The notes under the pieces were generated by a model. The model saw only the letters and a program-made list of their open reading frames with translations, was not told where the DNA came from and did no database searches. From Octopus sinensis (lineage: Eukaryota), in NCBI RefSeq assembly GCF_006345805.1, contig NC_043020.1, forward strand, positions 30,628,001 to 30,692,000: a stretch of DNA of 64,000 bases, in the 5' to 3' direction. The number at the start of each line of letters is the position of its first letter. Position 1 is the first letter of the stretch. A program made the position numbers and the translations under genes. Shown here piece by piece: positions 3,489-54,356 of this stretch.

Positions 3489-5484
3489 AAGGAAAGAAAG
3501 GATTAAAATATCCAGACAGATATCAATAAATGAATCTGGTTCCCTCTCTCCAACAATCAGACTCGAATCAATGCAAGTGGAGTAAAGAGCCCAGGTAATT
3601 CCTCATTTATGACAAGTAGATCCAAATAGCATTTAGAAGAATTTTGAGGAATTCAGAGTATTAGATAATGAAAGTACGGATAGAGAAAATCACATCTTTA
3701 ATTGTAGAATTCACCTTACAAAGCTGACAATTGTTTCTATTGTATTAACATATTCAGATATAGAAAATATTCAGATTAATACATCCAAAAATACATATTA
3801 ACATAACATTTTGAAGGCGATCCAAAATTAATTAAATTCAAAATGAACTAAGAAAATATTTCTTGTACACAAAGGCACGCAAAAAAGAACGTTAAGAAGA
3901 AATACAATATTCTAAGAAAAGGTATTTTAGTATTCAACTTTTGGTCATGGATAATGAAAGAATAAAAAATAAACATAAGAATTCTATGTCACAACAATTA
4001 GAAACATAGAGATTCTATGACATGTCAATTAGTTATCTATTTATTAAATTTGCTAAATATTTTTTAGAAAAATTATGCTTATATGAAAGGCAATTATAAT
4101 TAAGAATTGAAATTTTTAAATACCTTCTGAAATTTGCAACAACATTTCATTGAAAAATTCCCATTAAAATTTAATAAAATTAATTTAGATATAATTATAT
4201 AATATATTTCTTCAAGGCAAAGATCACATGTAGAATTGCCAATATTGTCCTTTAGAAAATCAGTGTTTAAGGAAAAATAAAGTCTATCAATGTAAGGTAA
4301 TAACAGAGGATCATAAGTATTATTACCTAGGTTCATCTGCTACAGTTTGGAAATCTAGATTTTATAATCATTCTCATTCATTTAAGTATAAAAGAAAAGG
4401 TAATTCTACAAATCTTAGTAAATGCATTTGGGATTTAAAGGATAGGAACAGAAAATATTATTTAAAGTGGTCCATTATTAGTTTTGCACCATCCATACTA
4501 CACTCTCAGAGTGGTTGGCATTAGGAAGGGCATCCAGCTGTAGAAACACTGCCAGATCAAGATTGGAGTCTGGTGCAGCCATCTGGCTCACCAGCCCTCA
4601 GTCAAAATCGTCCAACCCATACTAGCATGGAAAGCAGACGTTAAACGATGATGATATAATATTGGCAATTTTCCGTGTGAGCCCTGCTACACTTAACTCA
4701 GTAGAACAGTCAGGATGTGATGGCTAGAGAAAGAGACGAACGCACCTAGGAGTCAGCCAGAACACATTTTCAGATACATAAACAGGAACTTGTCCTGGGT
4801 ATGACACTGAACTGCATTCAGTGGGGGCGGGGATGCTCCAGTTGGGTAGTTCTGGAGTTGGTGGGAGCATGATGTCACCCCTTAATTACCATTACTCCCA
4901 GGTCCATTCTGACCTGGAAAGTAGTACCTGTCAGGGACCCATCTATAGGTTGTATAGAAAGAGTGAGCTCCTTAGCTGTGTTGAAAGCAGTCAATTTCGG
5001 AGAAGGAAAACTCCAAAACGAAGACCCTCTTCCAATATGTCCTAAGCCAGCAATGGAAGTGTATGGCTGATGAAACTAACATGAGGGGAATGTCCAATAA
5101 CATAAATTCATACTATGGAGGCAATCAGTTCATGTTAGTACACATTCTGTTGCATGCAGAAATTGAGGGAATTGGAGCAACACGAAATGAAGTGCTTTGC
5201 TGAAAGACACACGGCACCGTGGAGTCCAGGAATTGAATCTAAAACTGTATAATTACGAGGCCAACACACTAATAATTAGGATGTATGCTTACACACACAC
5301 ACACACACACACTCTCTCTCTCTCTCTCTTTCTTGCTTTGACATACTGGTTTAGAATGAGAGTTCCTGACAGTAGGAGACACACAATAGCCATGATATAC
5401 ACAACACCTGTACATGTATATTTACACACAAACGCATGCTCATACTCTCACAGTATTTAGTTATCTTTGTGATGCATTTCTTAC

Positions 5485-5595
5485 CCTTTTGACGATCTTC
5501 TCCTTGAGAAAAGGGCGAACAATGGAGAACAGAATATCAAACATGCTTGGTTCATGGATATAATGTATGCCCTTCAGACGTAATGGGAAGCACTC
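5485..5595 (-). CDS. TTPAL: TTPAL-like exon 5 (ECFPLRLKGIHYIHEPSMFDILFSIVRPFLKEKIVKR)
   Basis: TTTGCAG acceptor and AGG|GTAAG donor; 111 nt, phase 0; FPxRxKxxH and PFLKEKI motifs. Not in the ORF track. Confidence 0.95.
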
Positions 5596-5674
5596 CTGCA
5601 AATAAGTAGTAGTAGCAGTAGTCGTAAAGATTAACGAGTTTAATTACACATTTACATACTATGTATTATATAGC

Positions 5675-5734
<60 letters not shown>

Positions 5735-5743
<9 letters not shown>

Positions 5744-6520
5744 GGAACAAAAAGGCAATAGAGTGCATTGAAACGTTTGGACAGATCGACAATACAAAGG
5801 CAGACATGAGAAACAACAATCAGAAGGACAGGCAAAAAAACAATGGTCATTCTTGGCTTTCTTTCACTGATCAAGTCCCAGGAGTCATGACCATTTCGGG
5901 CAGTTACACTTGAGATGGTTCGATCAAGTTGCCCCCCAAAAAGTCTAAGCTAAGAGCATTAGACCCCTTTGTAAGGAAGCTATCGAATGTGTATGGCTTT
6001 AAAGGCAAAAAAACAAATAAACAAAAAGAACAGAGAACATGGTACACAATTATGAAAGCAAACAACAAGAAATAACAACAGGTGTCTTTCGACTGAGAAC
6101 GAATCAAATTGAGTTGGTGTGTATGAAGTGAAAGCCTAAAGGCAGGAACATGGGAGACGGACACAAGAGGTGTTGATGGTCGGCAATCAGGCCAAGAAAG
6201 AAAGATCATAGCTGGGTGGACACTGGTCACGTGGAAGGAAGAGAGATGGGTAGGGGGTGCAAGAAAAAGGAAGGAAAATGAGAGGGGGAATAAAAGATAG
6301 AGTAAGAGCCATGCAAAATTTAGATACATGCTTTCTATAAGGTAAGCACAAGGGTGTATATACGCCACTATATATATATATATAAATGGAACAAAAATGC
6401 AATAGAGTGCATTAAAACATTCAGACAGATAGATGATACAAAGGCGGAGAAGAGAAACAACAATTAGGACAGGTAAAAAAAGACAGGTCATTCTCGGCTT
6501 TCTTTCATCAGTCAAGTCCC
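5735..6520 (-). repeat. ~150-bp diverged direct repeats (5735-5880, 6375-6520) flanking ~490 bp; possibly a Penelope pseudo-LTR remnant
   Basis: Both copies run ATATAAATGGAACAAAAA...GCTTTCTTTCA...TCAAGTCCCA. The repeat is visible; the Penelope origin is inference. Confidence 0.55.
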
Positions 6521-6526
6521 ATGTAT

Positions 6527-6563
<37 letters not shown>

Positions 6564-8114
6564 CTAGCAGCAGCTAATCCTGGTTTCCCCCGGTCTGCTT
6601 GGTTGATGTGGCTGTGATCATTTTTGGTCAGGCACAATCTATAACAGCGTTTCTCAACCTTATTATTTCGGGTCCTCTTTTTCGATTGGAGACTCCAGCT
6701 GTATGAAAATTTCCTGACTCCCACCTTGTCAGAAAACAGCTTCAGGAGTCATGAAGAACGAATTTGTACATAGTCTGTTTCTGAGAGTTATTCTATTGGA
6801 CCTCTGTTTAATCATTAAAACATTAGGCAATCTTTCAATACGGGAACACATGACTGTCACTTACAAACCACGTGTGTTTATTTGCATTTCTTAATATGGG
6901 ATTGGGTGGAAAGGGGATCTTTTGAAGTCAGCATGAAAGCGAAAGTGACAGAGAGAGCGCGATTGTATAAGTGAAGTTCTTTTGAAGTTGGTGTGAAGTG
7001 GAAGAATTGATGTGCATGTGTGTGCGTGTATGTGTGTGAGAGAGAGCGCGAGGGACAAAGAGAGAGAGAGAGAGTGAGGGACAAAGAGAGAGAGAGAGAG
7101 ATAACTAAAATTTTTTATTCACTTTTTGTAGTGAGTGAATGATAGAGAAAAAGTGAGAGAGAGAGGTTATGTATGTATGTATGTATGTATGTATGAATGG
7201 CTTCAGTCACATACACACGCAGGTTGTTATGTATGTATGTATACATACATAGATGTATGTATGTATACATAGATGTATGTATCTATGTATGGCCAAGAGA
7301 GAGTTAACTGAAATTTTTCAATTCACTTTTGTAGTGAGTGAATGTGTGAGTGACTGACAGAGAAAAGGAGAGAGAGGTTATGTAATGTATGTATGGATAG
7401 CTTTGGCTGACTGTCATCCTGTACTCCCCTTGTTGCTAGCGAAATGGTATATGCCGGCTGTGTGAGCAACTGGTTGTTTTAATGGCAGGGGAATTCCATT
7501 AGAAAAAGTTTTAATCAATTTTCTCGGTAACTATGGGGGCTAGGAAAAAAATACCAACCGCATTCCAATTTATGCACCCGTCTCCACATGTGTGCCATTT
7601 TTCATGCAAATCCACCCAGCCATTTGGCTGTGAATCTCAAGACAAGAAAGAATGCAACAATCGCCCATATCTAATTTATATTATAGAAATATATATATAA
7701 TCATCATCATTGTCATCGTGTAACGTCCACTTGCCATGCTGGCATGGGTGGGACGGTTTGACAAGAGCTGGCCAGGCAGAAACCTGCACCAAGCTTCTGG
7801 TTTGGGCAGGAATTTTACAGTTGGATGTCCTTCCTAACACCAATCACTCAGCAGAGTGGACTTAGACTTTTTACATGGTACAAGCACAGGGGAGGTCAGT
7901 TTTGGCAAGGTTTTTACAGCTGGGCGCCCTTCCAAATACCAGCCACTTAACAGCATGGACTGGGTGCTTTTAAGTGACACCTGCTCTGACAGGGTCACCA
8001 AGTTCTTTCAAGACACTAAAAAAAATCTCTTTTGAGAGGGGAGGTTATAGTGAGACAGAGAGACAGAAACAGGTGTCTTGCTGTAAAGGGGTACAAGATT
8101 ACCTGGAGGGAGGA

Positions 8115-20434: not shown

Positions 20435-21057
20435 ATCATCATCATCGTCGTTTAACGTCCGTTCTCCATGCTAGCATGGGTTGGGCGGTTCGACCGGGGA
20501 TCTGGGAAGCCAGAAGGCTGCACCAGGCTCCAGTCTTATCTGGCAGTGTTTCTACAGCTGGATGCCCTTCCTAACGCCAACCACTCCGTGAGTGTAGTGG
20601 GTGCTTTTTACGTGCCACCTGCATAGGTGCCAGGCGAGGCTGGCAACGGCCACGGTCGGATTGGTGTATTTTATGTGCCACCGGCACGGAAGCCAGACAA
20701 GGCGGTGCTGGCATCGGCTACGAGTCGGATGGTGCTTTTTACGTACCACCAGACCAGGGATCCTGGCTGGTTCAATTCGATTTCGATTTCGCTTGCCCCA
20801 ACATGTCTTCGCAAGCAAGGGGGTTGGCATGGGTGCCTGTTGTACGGTCAGATTGGTGTATTTTATGTGCCACCGGCACGGAAGCCAGTGGAGGCGGCAG
20901 TGGCATCGGCCACGAGTCAGATAGTGCTTTTTACGTACCACCAGACCAGGGAACCTGGCTGGTTCGATTCGATTTCGCTTGCCCCAACATGTCTTCGCAA
21001 GCAAGGGGGTTGGCATGGGTGCCTGTCGTACGGTCAGATTGGTGTATTTACGTGCCA
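20435..21057 (-). mobile_element. Family C retroposon (RTE-type GAT tail) with internal ~200-bp tandem duplication
   Basis: Core GGCGTTAGGAAGGGCATCCAGCTGTAGAAAC and 3' CCATGCTAGCATGG...ACGTTAAACGA(TGA)n; 20629-20834 is repeated at ~20835-21030. Confidence 0.8.
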
Positions 21058-23327: not shown

Positions 23328-23738
23328 CCCATGCCAACCCCCTTGCTTGCGAAGACATGTTGGGGCAAGCGAAATCGAAATCGAAATCGAATTGAACCAG
23401 CCAGGATCCCTGGTCTGGTGGTATGTAAAAAGCACTATCCGATTCGTGGCCGATGCCAGCACCGCCTCGTCTGGCTTCCGTGCCGGTGGCACATAAAATA
23501 CACCAATCCGACCGTGGCCGTTGCCAGCCTCGCCTAGCACCTGTGCAGGTGGCACGTAAAAAGCACCCACTACACTCACGGAGTGGTTGGCGTTAGGAAG
23601 GGCATCCAGCTGTAGAAACACTGCCAGATAAGACTGGAGCCTGGTGCAGCCTTCTGGCTTCCCAGATCCCCCGGTCGAACCATCCAACCCATGCTAGCAT
23701 GGAGAACGGACGTTAAACGATGATGATGATGATGATGA
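23323..23738 (+). mobile_element. Family C retroposon, near-identical inverted partner of 20446-20834
   Basis: Same subfamily-specific internal segment (GCTTGCGAAGACATGTTGGGGCAAGCGAAATCG); (GAT)n tail. Confidence 0.85.
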
Positions 23739-44405: not shown

Positions 44406-44425
44406 TATCGTCTGTTCGAAGATTT

Positions 44426-45301
44426 GGTAAAATTACAGATTATCACCCCCACGATTTTCACTAAAAAAAAAAAAAAAAAACTCGGATTTTTTGCGTGGAA
44501 TCAAATACCCTGACCTCCTAATATGCTGCAAATCCCATATTTTGGTCCGGAATTCCTCCGGAAAAGGGGGGGGGGGGTATTACCCCCCCCCCCGGAATTT
44601 TCACAGGGAAAAAAAAAAAAAATCAGATTTCTAGCGTGGAATCAAGTACCCTGACCTCCTAATATGCTGCAAATCCCATATTTTGGTCCGGAAAGGGGGG
44701 TAACACCCCCCCCCCCCCGGAATTTTCACAAGAAAAAAAAAATCAGATTTTTTGCGTGGAATCAAGTACCCTGACCTCCTAATATGCTGCAAATCCCATA
44801 TTTTGGTCCGGAAAGGGGGGGGGGTAACCCCCTCCCCCGGAATTTTCACAAGGAAAAAAAAATAACATATCAATAATTTAGAAAAGAAACATTTCTAGAA
44901 AATAGTAAATTGAAGTGTCAACAAATTATTGGGCAAAATTGAAGTGTGAACAAATCATTGGGCAAAAGAAGATTTGGCATACTGTCATGCTTTTAGCTGT
45001 CAGAAGTGAAAGTCGTCAACTTCGTGTATTTGCGTCAGGTTCGCCGTTAGGCTTATAAAACAATTGAAGTTCAGTTTAAAGTTTATAAATAAATACATTT
45101 CATTCCATGTTCTGTTTAAACTTTATAAATAAATATATTCTTGCAGTGTGTGTATATGTGGCTATATGTCTGACTAATGTGTGTGTCTGTATTTATTGTA
45201 TGTGTGTATAAGTAGTTATATGCTTATATTATCCATTATAGTAATATTTGTCTGTTGAAACCTGTTTTAAGGCGGTCAATAGTTTAATTAAAGATGTATC
45301 T

Positions 45302-45341
<40 letters not shown>

Positions 45342-45359
45342 GTGTATATATACATGTGT

Positions 45360-45398
<39 letters not shown>

Positions 45399-46522
45399 TA
45401 TATATATACACATGTCTATATATATACACATGTATATATAAATATATATATATACATGTATAGACACATCTTTAATTAAACTATTGACTGCCTTAAAACG
45501 GCTTTCAACAGACAAATATTACTATAATGGATAATGTAATGGATAAAATTCAGACAAACTTACCTCTTGCTGTCAAAAAAGTGGATTAATTCTCAGCAAA
45601 ACATACTGTTATGCTAGACCAGTGGTTTTCAACCAGGGTTCCGCAAGAAGTTGCAAAACTGCTAAAATCGGCAGTAATTTTTAATTCTCCTGTGCAGATA
45701 TGTGTGCATAAGACTATTAAATTATTGTACAGGGGTTCCTCGAGCCAGTGGAATGTTTGAATTACGCTGTGTGGTTTCAGTTTCTAATTTTTGCTTCTGA
45801 TCTCTCTTTGCCCCCCCCCCCACCTCTCTATCTCAGTTGTTCATTCTGCTGATATTTAGAAAAGTTTTCGCGCCAAGTTTTGTTGTGGGTGGGAAAAGAT
45901 GAACGATTTAAAATAAATATACCTTAATTGTAGTGTGAGAAAGTATATATATTCTGATGATAAAATATATTATCTTTCAAAAACATCCCAAATTTATAGA
46001 CTATATCGTGTATGTTTAAGAAATGGTTCATGAGACATTGTTCATCTGTCTCCCCACCACACCTCCACCTACACAAAAATTAGTTTGAGATAGAGAGGGT
46101 GGCACAGAGAGAGATCAGAAGCAAAAATTAGAACCTGACACTATCACAGAGCGTAATTCAAACATTCCACTGGCTCGAGGAACCCCTGTACAATAATTTA
46201 ATAGTCTTATGCACACATATCTGCACAGGAGAATTAAAAATTACTGCCGATTTTAGCAGTTTTGCAACTTCTTGCGGAACCCTGGTTGAAAACCACTGGT
46301 CTAGCATAACAGTATGTTTTGCTGAGAATTAATCCACTTTTTTTGACAGCAAGAGGTAAGTTTGTCTGAATTTTATCCATTATAGTAATATTTGTCTGTT
46401 GAAACCCGTTTTAAGGCGGTCAATAGTTTAATTAAAGATGTGTCTATACATGTATATATATATACATGTGTATATATATATATTTATATATACATGTGTA
46501 TATATATAGACATGTGTATATA

Positions 46523-46576
<54 letters not shown>

Positions 46577-46594
46577 ACACATGTATATATACAC

Positions 46595-46632
<38 letters not shown>

Positions 46633-47510
46633 AGATACATCTTTAATTAAACTATTGACCGCCTTAAAACAGGTTTCAACAGACAAATATTACTATAATG
46701 GATAATATAAGCATATAACTACTTATACACACATACAATAAATACAGACACACACATTAGTCAGACATATAGCCACATATACACACACTGCAAGAATATA
46801 TTTATTTATAAAGTTTAAACAGAACATGGAATGAAATGTATTTATTTATAAACTTTAAACTGAACTTCAATTGTTTTATAAGCCTAACGGCGAACCTGAC
46901 GCAAATACACGAAGTTGACGACTTTCACTTCTGACAGCTAAAAGCATGACAGTATGCCAAATCTTCTTTTGCCCAATGATTTGTTCACACTTCAATTTTG
47001 CCCAATAATTTGTTGACACTTCAATTTACTATTTTCTAGAAATGTTTCTTTTCTAAATTATTGATATGTTATTTTTTTTTTCCTTGTGAAAATTCCGGGG
47101 GAGGGGGTTACCCCCCCCCCTTTCCGGAGCAATTCCGGACCAAAATATGGGATTTGCAGCATATTAGGAGGTCAGGGTACTTGATTCCACGCAAAAAATC
47201 TGATTTTTTTTTTCTTGTGAAAATTCCGGGGGGGGGTGTTACCCCCCTTTCCGGACCAAAATATGGGATTTGCAGCATATTAGGAGGTCAGGGTACTTGA
47301 TTCCACGCTAGAAATCTGATTTTTTTTTTTTCCTCGTGAAAATTCCGGGGGGGGGGTAACCCCCCCCCCCCTTTCCGGAGGAATTCCGGACCAAAATATG
47401 GGATTTGCAGCATATTAGGAGGTCAGGGTATTTGATTCCACGCAAAAAATCCGAGTTTTTTTTTTTTTTTCTTAGTGAAAATCGTGGGGGTGATAATCTG
47501 TAATTTTACC
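44426..47510. mobile_element. 3,085-bp foldback DNA element, Merlin/IS1016-like termini, non-autonomous
   Basis: Inverted arms 44426-45835 and 46086-47510 with a 250-bp spacer; termini GGTAAAATT...AATTTTACC; direct repeat GAAGATTT at 44418-44425 and 47511-47518; no transposase ORF. Confidence 0.85.
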
Positions 47511-47620
47511 GAAGATTTTATTTACCTAGTTTCATTGGAATACATCCGCTTGTTTTCAGTAATAGAAATATTAAAATTACTAAGTCTCTCTAAAGGAGAT
47601 CACGGCAGCGTTACTGGATA

Positions 47621-48024
47621 TTAATAGTTATCGCCAAACTAATATGGCAGTCCATAAATATAAGACTAAAGCTGTCGCTGATTAGCTCCAAGAGGCCATC
47701 GCCTCTAGCTAGCTATTTGACACACGAACCTGTGTCCATTACAACCTTCGAAACTAGGTAAATAAAATCTTCGAACAGACGATCGGCAGCGACACCTGCT
47801 GGGTCTGACTACTCTGCATTGATAAAGTGCAACAACCCTGAAACATGTATGCAGATGTCTGACCAGCAAGGTGAAGCGGCTGACCTCCCCTGTTTGAAGG
47901 TTGTATTGGACGCAGGTTCGTGTGTCATATAGCTAGCTAGAGGCGATGGCCTCTTGGAGCTAATCAGCGACAGCTTTAGTCTTATATTTATGGACTGCCA
48001 TATTAGTTTGGCGATAACTATTAA
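47621..48024. mobile_element. MITE with ~130-bp TIRs, TTAA/TA-flanked
   Basis: 47621-47749 is the reverse complement of 47896-48024 (about 3 mismatches); both ends carry TTAA. Confidence 0.8.
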
Positions 48025-48026
48025 TA

Positions 48027-48062
<36 letters not shown>

Positions 48063-48611: not shown

Positions 48612-49319
<708 letters not shown>

Positions 49320-50151
49320 GCACAGGTGTGGCTCTGTGGTAAGAAGACTGCTTCACAACCACATGATTCCAGGTTCAGTTTCACTGCAGGGCACCTTGCA
49401 CAAGCATCTTATGCTATTGGCTTTGGTAGGTTGAAACTGAAAGAAGCCCACCGTATTGCTGCTCACTACACCTCCAACACCCACACTCTATTTTTCTAAC
49501 CAGGTTCTATGCTCATATTCTTGTTACTTGTGAGTATACCCCAGCACTACACCATCTCTCTTCCACTTTTGCTGTTTCCTGCTCTCTCTTTTTCCCTTTG
49601 GTCACTCTCTCCTCTTGTTTTTCTTCTGACCAGGTAACCAAGTATCAGCCTTACATTAGCACACTTGTCTCTGGCCTCTTTCTTGTACCTCTCTCTCTCT
49701 CTCTGAATAACCATGTACCTCCCCTATAGCAAGATGTCTATTTCTTCCTCTCTATTTCTCTGTTACACTCTAACCTTTCATCATTTGATACTGGATCACC
49801 TACACTGATGCCCCCTCTGTTGTGGCAAGACCCCTACTTCTGTCTCTCTGTCATACTCTAACCTTTCATCCTCTGACACAAGTTCCCCTCCTCAAATGCT
49901 CTGCCCCTCTCATAATTCCTTGTCCTGTGAGTTACTTGGTTACCCTGCCAGTGCTGGTGCCACATTAAAAGCAGCCAGCCCACATTGTAAAGTGGTTGGC
50001 ATTTGGAAGGGCATCCAGCTGTAAAAACACTGCCAGATCCGATTGGAGCCTGGGGCAGCCACTGGCTTTTCAGACTTCAGTCAAACCGTCCAATCCATGC
50101 CAGCATAGAAAATGGATGTTAACCGATGATGATGATGATGACAATGATATA

Positions 50152-54101: not shown

Positions 54102-54173
54102 ATGGCGGAGCAACCGTCTAAGACAGATATTTCGGCTGTCTTCAAGCGACTTAAATCTATTCCATGTAACAAG
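54102..54173 (+). CDS. ARFGAP2: ADP-ribosylation factor GTPase-activating protein 2/3, coding exon 1 (MAEQPSKTDISAVFKRLKSIPCNK)
   Basis: AAGAGATGG Kozak-like start; 24 codons then AAG|GTAACA donor. Resembles the ARFGAP2/3 N-terminus (xxxPxKxEIxxxFKRLRxxPTNK) that precedes the CFDC zinc finger. No CFDC exon was found in 54174-64000, so intron 1 would be >9.8 kb. Probably a co-orthologue of ARFGAP2 and ARFGAP3. Confidence 0.85.
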
Positions 54174-54356
54174 GTAACACCACTTCACAGCTTCTCTTCT
54201 CTTCTTTATCCGCTGACATTTCCTAATATTTATTTTGCTTCTCTCCACCATTCTACAGCCAGTCCTCTCATCTCTGCGCTGCTTACATACGTATCTCTTG
54301 TATATAGAGATTTTATATATATATGTTATATATGTTATGTATATATGTTTATATAC

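What the first reader, a model, noticed from the sequence alone, without database searches (positions are those of the whole stretch)
44418..47518. 3.1-kb foldback transposon made almost entirely of ~1.4-kb inverted arms, with Merlin-like ends and an 8-bp TSD
Seen: 44426-45835 is the reverse complement of 46086-47510. Differences are mostly homopolymer and TA-tract lengths, and the spacer is only 250 bp. The termini are GGTAAAATT...AATTTTACC, flanked by the direct repeat GAAGATTT. There is no ORF. Established: GGNRM termini with 8-9-bp TSDs characterise Merlin/IS1016 elements, whereas hAT and P elements start with CA/TA. A 9-bp reading (CGAAGATTT, MULE-like) would leave one G unpaired. Inference: this is a young, trans-mobilised foldback family that moved as a unit, possibly undescribed in cephalopods. 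It could extrude a cruciform or yield ~1.4 kb of dsRNA.
Basis: partly seen in the sequence, partly recalled or inferred. Interest (0 to 1): 0.85.

Follow-up and report, generated by a model that had tools for sequence, protein, structure and literature searches.

The report
Octopus foldback transposon carrying Merlin fragments
This is a real 3.1-kb insertion of a non-coding "foldback" DNA transposon in an octopus genome; its two 1.4-kb mirror-image arms carry dead pieces of a Merlin transposon, so it is an ordinary kind of mobile element in an unusually extreme shape.

Summary
Window 44426-47510 is a 3,085-bp palindrome: arms of 1,410 and 1,425 nt around a 250-bp middle, ends GGTAAAATT...AATTTTACC, flanked by GAAGATTT on both sides. 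A 34-bp uninterrupted copy of the target, with one GAAGATTT, lies 240 bp downstream, so this is an insertion with an 8-bp target-site duplication (9 bp is not strictly excluded).

The window is octopus DNA. Each arm is a mosaic:
- a 37-bp terminus and about 3.3 tandem ~120-bp repeats that reiterate a terminal motif;
- a dead fragment of a Merlin transposase gene (aa 75-104);
- the 5' terminus plus about 170 bp of the same Merlin family;
- a nested 316-bp palindrome and a truncated MITE.

Four octopus Merlin insertions fetched here all have GG...CC ends and 8-bp duplications. Merlin affiliation is therefore likely but unproven: no autonomous partner with these outer ends was found. No second copy was found either, though almost no octopus DNA could be searched.

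Arm divergence is two-tiered: 0.2% over the outer 1,340 bp and about 10% over the innermost 70 bp. This suggests a recent inverted duplication outward from an older short inverted repeat.

One oddity is unexplained. The 8-mer beside the internal Merlin end is identical to the outer duplication.

Verdict: a new member of a known kind, of modest interest.

The parts
44418..44425 (+). Left target-site duplication GAAGATTT
   Evidence: Sequence. Present once in the empty-site paralogue.
44426..47510 (.). Whole foldback element (3,085 bp), ends GGTAAAATT...AATTTTACC
44426..45835 (+). Left arm (1,410 nt)
   Evidence: Global alignment to the reverse complement of the right arm
44426..44462 (+). Outer terminal domain (37 bp). 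Its motif CCCCCACGATTTTCAC recurs once in each subterminal repeat. Mirror copy at 47474-47510.
   Evidence: Families D7 and D8; terminus unique in the window
44463..44870 (+). About 3.3 subterminal tandem repeats of ~120-143 bp. Each holds a G-run/C-run hairpin, an A-run and the motif CCGGAATTTTCAC. Mirror copy at 47066-47473.
   Evidence: D4-D8; TRF period 120/116
44877..44975 (+). Dead fragment of a Merlin (DDE_Tnp_IS1595-type) transposase gene, equal to aa 75-104 of O. sinensis LOC115231130. It has a 29-bp tandem duplication and a 15-bp deletion, and ends in the native codons GAAGATTT. Mirror copy at 46959-47057.
   Evidence: blastn 94% over 52 bp to L005 6224-6275; alignment; tblastn; TRF 29-bp repeat
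44968..44975 (+). Internal GAAGATTT, identical to the outer TSD, immediately before the internal Merlin terminus. Its complement lies at 46959-46966.
44976..45145 (+). 5' terminus (GGCATACTGTCATGC...) and subterminal ~170 bp of the same Merlin family, with internal deletions. Mirror copy at 46789-46958.
   Evidence: Alignment to L005 5576-5813. The same terminus is seen in L005 and L006.
45224..45539 (.). Nested 316-bp palindrome with a (TA)n core inside the left arm. Its mirror in the right arm is 46370-46708.
   Evidence: I6/I8 and I5/I7; TRF
45614..45758 (+). Truncated copy of a dispersed octopus MITE (termini CAGTGGTTTTCAACC). Mirror copy at 46160-46304.
   Evidence: 94-96% to two copies in O. 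sinensis locus L001
45769..45835 (+). Innermost, about 10% diverged part of the left arm (the older inverted repeat). Its partner is 46086-46149.
   Evidence: 7 of the 10 substitutions and 2 indels fall here
45836..46085 (.). Middle domain (250 bp): unique, non-coding, not self-complementary
46086..47510 (-). Right arm (1,425 nt)
47511..47518 (+). Right target-site duplication GAAGATTT
47750..47783 (-). Empty-site paralogue: 34 bp identical to the joined flanks (ATCGTCTGTTC-GAAGATTT-TATTTACCTAGTTTC)
   Evidence: 100% over 34 bp, E=1.7e-13

Best explanation
This is a non-autonomous, foldback-type cut-and-paste (class II, TIR) transposon inserted in an intergenic stretch of an octopus genome. 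It lies 6.6 kb upstream of exon 1 of an ArfGAP2/3-like gene.

**Shown**
- Its two ends joined a target with an 8-bp stagger, duplicating GAAGATTT.
- It encodes nothing.
- Each arm is a patchwork: a terminal domain, tandem ~120-bp repeats that reiterate a terminal motif, a dead piece of a Merlin transposase gene, a Merlin 5' end, a nested palindrome and a MITE fragment.

**Inferred**
- The 1.4-kb arms were made by one inverted duplication, through fold-back priming or a template switch during double-strand-break or gap repair. Arm-to-arm gene conversion may have kept them so.
- The reiterated terminal motif marks transposase-binding sites.
- Movement depends on a transposase supplied in trans. 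The most likely source is the Merlin/IS1595-like superfamily, which is abundant and recently active in Octopus.

Whether the palindrome formed before or after arrival at this site is open.
For: - **Structure and significance:**
- **Insertion with an exact duplication:** the empty-site paralogue.
- **No coding capacity:**
- **Foldback anatomy (outer domain, tandem repeats, inner domain, middle):**. This matches the scheme described for foldback elements in PMC4079207.
- **Octopus origin:**
- **Merlin content of the arms:**. The reference proteins carry PF12762.
- **Octopus Merlins have GG...CC ends and 8-bp TSDs in 4 of 4 insertions:**
- **Literature on Merlin:** terminal 5'-GG and 8-9-bp TSDs. 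There are 191 Merlin sequences in O. bimaculoides (PMC8101967). There are 11 recently active Merlin insertions in O. vulgaris (PMC13282606).
- **Two-tier arm divergence:** 3 substitutions in ~1,340 bp against 7 in ~70 bp.
- **Junction between tandem repeats and gene fragment:** it falls in an A-run shared by both, as expected of template switching.
Against: - Only one copy is known.
- The outer 450 bp (terminus plus repeats) has no homology to any of the three octopus Merlin families fetched. Its resemblance to one Merlin TIR is weak (p 0.01-0.04, inflated by an A-run).
- The Merlin pieces carry their own, different terminus inside the arm, so they may be captured or nested passengers.
- A 9-bp duplication cannot be excluded from this one copy.
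- The divergence step could instead reflect erosion of conversion near the spacer.
- The identity between the internal 8-mer and the outer TSD is not explained by this model.
Confidence: 0.6

Rival explanations
1. The locus was remodelled in place. A Merlin-family element with the GGCATACTGTCATGC terminus first inserted at GAAGATTT here. Later template switches or unequal exchanges used the 8-nt identity between this TSD and the transposase gene's own GAAGATTT. These events interposed the outer segments and built the palindrome. On this reading the outer 'ends' were never used for transposition and there is no foldback family.
For: - The 8-mer beside the internal Merlin terminus equals the outer TSD. 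Both are native to their own contexts. The position-specific chance is about 3e-5.
- Other octopus Merlin TSDs are unrelated 8-mers, and no TSD consensus is reported (PMC8101967), so a target preference is unsupported.
- No other copy of the outer part was found.
Against: - Both outer junctions are exact, symmetric, GG...CC-ended and flanked by a clean 8-bp direct duplication. That is the signature of a transposase joining two ends to a staggered target.
- I could not derive the whole structure from any simple series of in-place events.
- Almost no octopus DNA could be searched, so the absence of other copies carries little weight.
Confidence: 0.2
2. It is a foldback element of the Mutator/MULE-Foldback superfamily with a 9-bp duplication (CGAAGATTT), like most described foldback elements. 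The Merlin fragments are unrelated nested debris.
For: - Most foldback elements have been assigned to Mutator (PMC4079207).
- A 9-bp reading fits both the filled site and the empty site.
- The Merlin pieces have their own internal terminus.
Against: - The 9-bp reading leaves one G unpaired at the ends, whereas the 8-bp reading gives perfect GG...CC ends.
- Octopus Merlins show exactly this end and TSD pattern.
- No MULE-like sequence was seen in the element.
Confidence: 0.12
3. It is a local inverted duplication or an assembly artefact (a chimeric fold-back read), not a mobile element.
For: - Many arm differences are homopolymer lengths, typical of long-read errors.
- Only one copy is known.
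Against: - The 250-bp middle is unique and a ~10% diverged inner repeat is present. The arms also differ by 11-18-bp indels and substitutions.
- The boundaries are exact, with an 8-bp direct repeat.
- An uninterrupted paralogue of the target lies in the same window.
- The sequence continues normally on both sides.
Confidence: 0.04

Closest known systems
Merlin superfamily (IS1016/IS1595-like) non-autonomous derivatives
   Same: - Terminal 5'-GG...CC-3' and an 8-bp target-site duplication.
- Internal remnants of a DDE_Tnp_IS1595-type transposase gene and of a Merlin end.
- Subterminal short repeats, as in the octopus Merlin TIRs seen here.
- Merlin is abundant and recently active in Octopus.
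   Different: - The arms are 1.4 kb, against the 24-462 bp reported for Merlin TIRs (PMC8101967).
- The outer terminus matches no Merlin family examined.
- The Merlin remnants belong to a family with another terminus.
Drosophila foldback-like elements: FB, Tetris, and Galileo (P superfamily)
   Same: - The element is almost entirely long TIRs, organised as outer domain, tandem repeats and inner domain, around a short non-coding middle.
- It is non-autonomous.
- The TIRs were lengthened by recruiting internal sequence and expanding tandem repeats. In Galileo the longest TIRs (up to 1,250 bp) are also found in non-autonomous copies (PMC3573991).
   Different: - FB and Tetris have 8-10-bp TSDs and are assigned to Mutator.
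- Galileo has 7-bp TSDs and a P-type transposase.
- Here the TSD, the ends and the internal relics point to Merlin, and the host is a cephalopod.
Palindromes made by fold-back priming at short inverted repeats next to a DNA break (described in yeast, Tetrahymena and mammalian cells; from my own knowledge, not checked here)
   Same: An older, diverged short inverted repeat at the centre, with nearly perfect newly copied arms extending outward.
   Different: Here the duplication stops exactly at a transposon-like terminus, and the product sits between target-site duplications.

Membership tests
Merlin superfamily | 8- or 9-bp target-site duplication | tested here: met
   GAAGATTT on both sides and a single copy in the 34-bp empty-site paralogue. 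8 bp with perfect ends; a 9-bp reading is possible.
Merlin superfamily | TIRs with a conserved terminal 5'-GG | tested here: met
   GGTAAAATT.../...AATTTTACC. The octopus Merlins in L002, L004 and L005, and the L005 MITE, also start with GG.
Merlin superfamily | Encodes a DDE_Tnp_IS1595 transposase, or shares its TIRs with an element that does | tested here: inconclusive
   No domain in six frames. The outer ends match none of three octopus Merlin families. The genome could not be searched.
Merlin superfamily | Sequence homology to Merlin elements | tested here: met
   Transposase-gene fragment aa 75-104 and 170 bp of a Merlin 5' end in each arm. These are internal, and come from a family with different termini.
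Foldback elements (structural class) | Long TIRs making up most of the element, with internal tandem repeats and a short non-coding middle | tested here: met
   The arms make up 92% of the element. There are 3.3 tandem ~120-bp repeats per arm. The middle is 250 bp with no ORF or domain.
Foldback elements (structural class) | A dispersed family of copies | not testable with these tools
   No further copy in the window, in 94 kb of other octopus loci, among annotated proteins or in JGI metagenomes. No octopus genome was searchable by DNA.
Mutator/MULE-Foldback superfamily | 9-10-bp TSD and a MULE transposase partner | tested here: inconclusive
   The 9-bp reading needs an unpaired terminal G. 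No MULE domain in the element. A partner was not searchable.
hAT superfamily | 8-bp TSD with termini of the YARNG type | tested here: not met
   The TSD length fits, but the termini are GGTAA. The terminal consensus is from my own knowledge.
P superfamily (Galileo-like) | 7-8-bp TSD, CA-type termini, THAP/P transposase partner | tested here: not met
   Termini are GG...CC. Galileo has 7-bp TSDs (PMC3573991).

The most novel reading that the evidence does not exclude
The locus may preserve the birth of a foldback transposon. A resident Merlin insertion would have been rebuilt in place by microhomology-guided template switching. The switch used the chance identity between its own 8-bp target-site duplication and an 8-mer in the transposase gene. 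Fold-back priming at a short inner inverted repeat would then have produced a new element with new, perfectly matched 1.4-kb ends.
Probability: 0.15. Interest if true: 0.55.

Novelty: new member of a known kind. Interest (0 to 1): 0.33.

Why it matters
Foldback elements are known to drive inversions and other rearrangements and to seed satellite DNA. Most have been tied to Mutator, or in one case to P. A Merlin-linked foldback with 1.4-kb arms would extend that list to another superfamily and to cephalopods, whose genomes are very repeat-rich.

The two-tier arm divergence and the mosaic of junctions also give a readable record of how such long inverted ends are built.

In practice, a 3-kb near-perfect palindrome is a likely site of assembly error, replication stalling and hairpin RNA. 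It sits 6.6 kb upstream of an ArfGAP2/3-like gene.

Tried and rejected
**Searches for other copies or the same locus**
- Exact look-ups of two ORFs, one spanning the left junction and one from the repeats: not on record.
- A chimeric protein query made of seven element ORFs found only a gene model containing the MITE fragment.
- I tried to reach the orthologous locus through the ArfGAP exon-1 peptide. The search returned only short non-octopus fragments, so one search was wasted.
- Two UniRef-only O. bimaculoides Merlin proteins were not on record.
- A scan of JGI metagenome contigs for the repeat core gave 0 hits.
- A full-text search for the terminal sequences found nothing relevant, and no paper combines foldback with octopus.

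**Other negative results**
- Rfam found nothing in the window.
- Pfam did not recognise the short flanking exons.

**Ideas rejected**
- I first called the MITE fragment Tc1-like. I withdrew that, because its ends and flanks do not settle a superfamily.
- The resemblance of the outer terminus to the L002 Merlin TIR is too weak to use.
- I tried to derive the four GAAGATTT copies from standard schemes: nested insertion, autointegration circles, duplicative inversion, sister-chromatid exchange. None fits all four junctions.
- An early note misplaced the internal 8-mer by 2 bp. The correct positions are 44968-44975 and 46959-46966.
Full report
**1. The observation**

The inverted repeat is real.
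- A gapped alignment pairs 44426-45835 with the reverse complement of 46086-47510. The arms are 1,410 and 1,425 nt and differ by 10 substitutions and 15 indels.
- The middle, 45836-46085, is 250 bp and has no significant self-complementarity.
- The ends read GGTAAAATT...AATTTTACC and are flanked by GAAGATTT at 44418-44425 and 47511-47518.
- The 22-nt terminus occurs only at these two places in the window, with 0 matches expected by chance.
- Folded as one DNA strand, 1,371 of 1,410 left-arm bases pair with the right arm. The energy is -1613 kcal/mol, against about -280 for shuffles; with RNA parameters it is -2422.
- The longest ORF is 80 aa, inside tandem repeats. No Pfam domain is found in any frame of one arm plus the middle.
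- It is by far the longest inverted repeat in the window.

**2. It is an insertion**

When the two flanks are joined, 34 bp (44407-44425 plus 47519-47533, ATCGTCTGTTC-GAAGATTT-TATTTACCTAGTTTC) match 47783-47750 on the other strand at 100%. This paralogue carries GAAGATTT once. The 3,085 bp were therefore inserted into a pre-existing sequence, and 8 bp were duplicated.

A 9-bp reading (CGAAGATTT) fits both sites as well but leaves one terminal G unpaired.

These features, together with the unique middle and the real differences between the arms, make a fold-back read artefact or a simple local inverted duplication very unlikely.

**3. Organism and setting**

A protein query built from the element's ORFs hit one O. 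sinensis gene model. The 34-kb O. sinensis locus around it shares many dispersed repeats with the window at 85-97%. The window is therefore octopus DNA; the species was not determined.

The element lies between divergent genes:
- An ArfGAP2/3-like first exon at 54103-54174 on the plus strand.
- CRAL-TRIO/CRALBP-like exons near 20 kb and 10.5 kb on the minus strand (partly my own reading).

**4. Anatomy of an arm, from outside in**

a. A 37-bp terminal domain.

b. About 3.3 tandem repeats of ~120-143 bp at 44463-44870. Each has a G-run/C-run hairpin, an A-run and the motif CCGGAATTTTCAC. That motif echoes CCCCCACGATTTTCAC in the terminal domain. I infer, but did not test, that this is an array of transposase-binding sites, as in other long-TIR elements (PMC3688188, abstract as listed).

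c. At 44877-44975, a fragment of a Merlin transposase gene. It is 94% identical over 52 bp to the ORF of O. sinensis LOC115231130 (L005) and 85% to O. bimaculoides LOC106883699 (L006).
- It translates as FRKETFLENSKLKCQQII...HWAKEDLA, equal to aa 75-104.
- It has a 29-bp tandem duplication and a 15-bp deletion.
- Both reference proteins carry PF12762 DDE_Tnp_IS1595. The fragment lies upstream of that domain.
- The junction with the tandem repeats falls in an A-run shared by both partners.

d. At 44976-45145, the 5' terminus (GGCATACTGTCATGCTTTTAGCTGTCAGAAGTGAAAGT) and subterminal region of the same Merlin family, aligned to L005 5576-5813 with deletions. Homology among the window, L005 and L006 starts exactly at GG.

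e. A TG-rich stretch, then a nested 316-bp palindrome with a (TA)n core.

f. A truncated copy of a dispersed octopus MITE, 94-96% identical to two copies in L001.

g. The innermost ~70 bp, which are about 10% diverged between the arms.

No non-microsatellite part recurs elsewhere in the window.

**5. Octopus Merlins**

I used an O. bimaculoides Merlin protein printed in the supplement of PMC8101967 to fetch three Merlin families. Every insertion that could be delimited has GG...CC ends and an 8-bp duplication.

| Insertion | Ends | TSD |
|---|---|---|
| L005 Merlin | GG(A)ACAGTCATGCC / GGCAGTCATGCC | AAACAAAG |
| L002, 8.7-kb Merlin with ~354-bp TIRs | GG...CC | GCAAATCT |
| L004, same family | GG...CC | CAAGGCTT |
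| 472-bp Merlin MITE inside L005 | GG...CC | CAAAAGAG / CAGAAGAG |

The literature agrees:
- Merlin has terminal 5'-GG, 8-9-bp TSDs and TIRs of 24-462 bp, with 191 Merlin sequences in O. bimaculoides (PMC8101967).
- O. vulgaris has 11 recently active Merlin insertions (PMC13282606).

**6. Classification**

The ends, the duplication length and the internal relics all point to Merlin.

It is still not proof:
- The relics belong to a family whose own terminus lies inside the arm.
- The outer 450 bp match none of the three families.
- The resemblance to one Merlin TIR is weak.
- Other passengers, namely the MITE and the nested palindrome, show that the arms collect foreign pieces.

I put Merlin-type mobilisation at roughly 0.55-0.6 and a MULE/Foldback affiliation near 0.1. 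hAT and P are disfavoured by the termini.

**7. How the arms arose**

Substitutions are 3 in the outer ~1,340 bp (0.2%) and 7, plus 2 indels, in the innermost ~70 bp.

The simplest reading is that an older short inverted repeat flanked the middle. One inverted duplication then copied one side outward to the terminus, by fold-back priming or by a template switch during break or gap repair. This gave two identical ends. Loss of the transposase gene together with TIR elongation is the route proposed for foldback elements generally (PMC4079207; PMC3573991).

Continuing arm-to-arm conversion that fades near the spacer would give a similar pattern. The data cannot separate the two. They also cannot say whether the duplication preceded the insertion.

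**8. An unexplained coincidence**

The 8-mer just before the internal Merlin terminus (44968-44975) is GAAGATTT, identical to the outer duplication.
- Inside the arm it is native transposase-gene sequence, the codons for E-D-L. L005 reads GAAGATTTAGCC.
- Outside the element it is native genomic sequence.
- By base composition, the position-specific chance is about 3e-5.
- The other octopus Merlin TSDs are unrelated, and no consensus is reported.

Either Merlin integration has a hidden preference, or a Merlin end once abutted this very duplication. In the second case the 8-nt identity would have guided a rearrangement in place. I could not derive the whole structure from any simple scheme. I list this in-place origin as a rival explanation (0.2) and as the basis of the novel reading.

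**9. Limits**

No octopus genome could be searched by DNA, so copy number, other TSDs, an autonomous partner and presence/absence at the orthologous site all remain open.

Cruciform or dsRNA formation is thermodynamically possible. No transcription or structure data exist here. From general knowledge, a 250-nt spacer disfavours cruciform extrusion from duplex DNA.

**10. Verdict**

This is a real, well-delimited foldback transposon insertion, probably Merlin-related. It is a new member of a known kind and of modest interest. It carries a curious internal record of how it was built.

Noticed in passing
window 47618-48027 (arms 47618-47752 and 47893-48027): A 410-bp palindrome (135-nt arms, 97%) lies 100 bp downstream of the foldback. 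Its loop begins with the inverted 34-bp copy of the foldback's uninterrupted target. This gives two interleaved inverted-repeat systems, possibly a templated insertion from an old break repair.
   Followed up: partly
window 44968-44975 and 46959-46966, against 44418-44425 and 47511-47518: The 8-mer next to the internal Merlin terminus is identical to the outer target-site duplication, although each is native to its own context. The position-specific chance is about 3e-5. Unexplained.
   Followed up: partly
L005 (O. sinensis VCDQ01004827.1) 5415-7751: Three-level nesting. A 472-bp Merlin MITE (6778-7249) interrupts the transposase ORF of a ~2.1-kb Merlin (about 5576-7650). That Merlin sits between outer inverted repeats (5415-5456 and 7710-7751), for which no matching TSD was found.
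   Followed up: partly
L002 and L004 (O. sinensis chromosomes), L003 (O. vulgaris): An ~8.7-kb Merlin with ~354-bp TIRs and an intact 305-aa DDE_Tnp_IS1595 ORF. Copies are 98-99.6% identical, at different sites with different 8-bp TSDs. It looks recently active.
   Followed up: partly
L001 10001-24436 (O. sinensis LOC118761090): This 'uncharacterized protein' gene model contains a peptide translated from the dispersed MITE that is also present in the foldback arms. It is probably an annotation built on repeats.
   Followed up: no
window 54103-54174 (+); about 19.9-20.1 kb and 10.5-10.7 kb (-): A likely first exon of an ArfGAP2/3-like gene (MAEQPSKTDISAVFKRLKSIPCNK, then a GT donor), and exons of a CRAL-TRIO/CRALBP-like gene. 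The foldback lies between these divergent genes.
   Followed up: partly
window 20496-20794 and 23373-23671: Two 299-nt copies (97%) of a dispersed octopus repeat in inverted orientation, 2.6 kb apart. More copies lie near 25.9 kb and in L001.
   Followed up: no
window 49016-49320: A roughly 300-bp (TA)n microsatellite, similar to the (TA)n cores of the nested palindromes inside the foldback arms.
   Followed up: no
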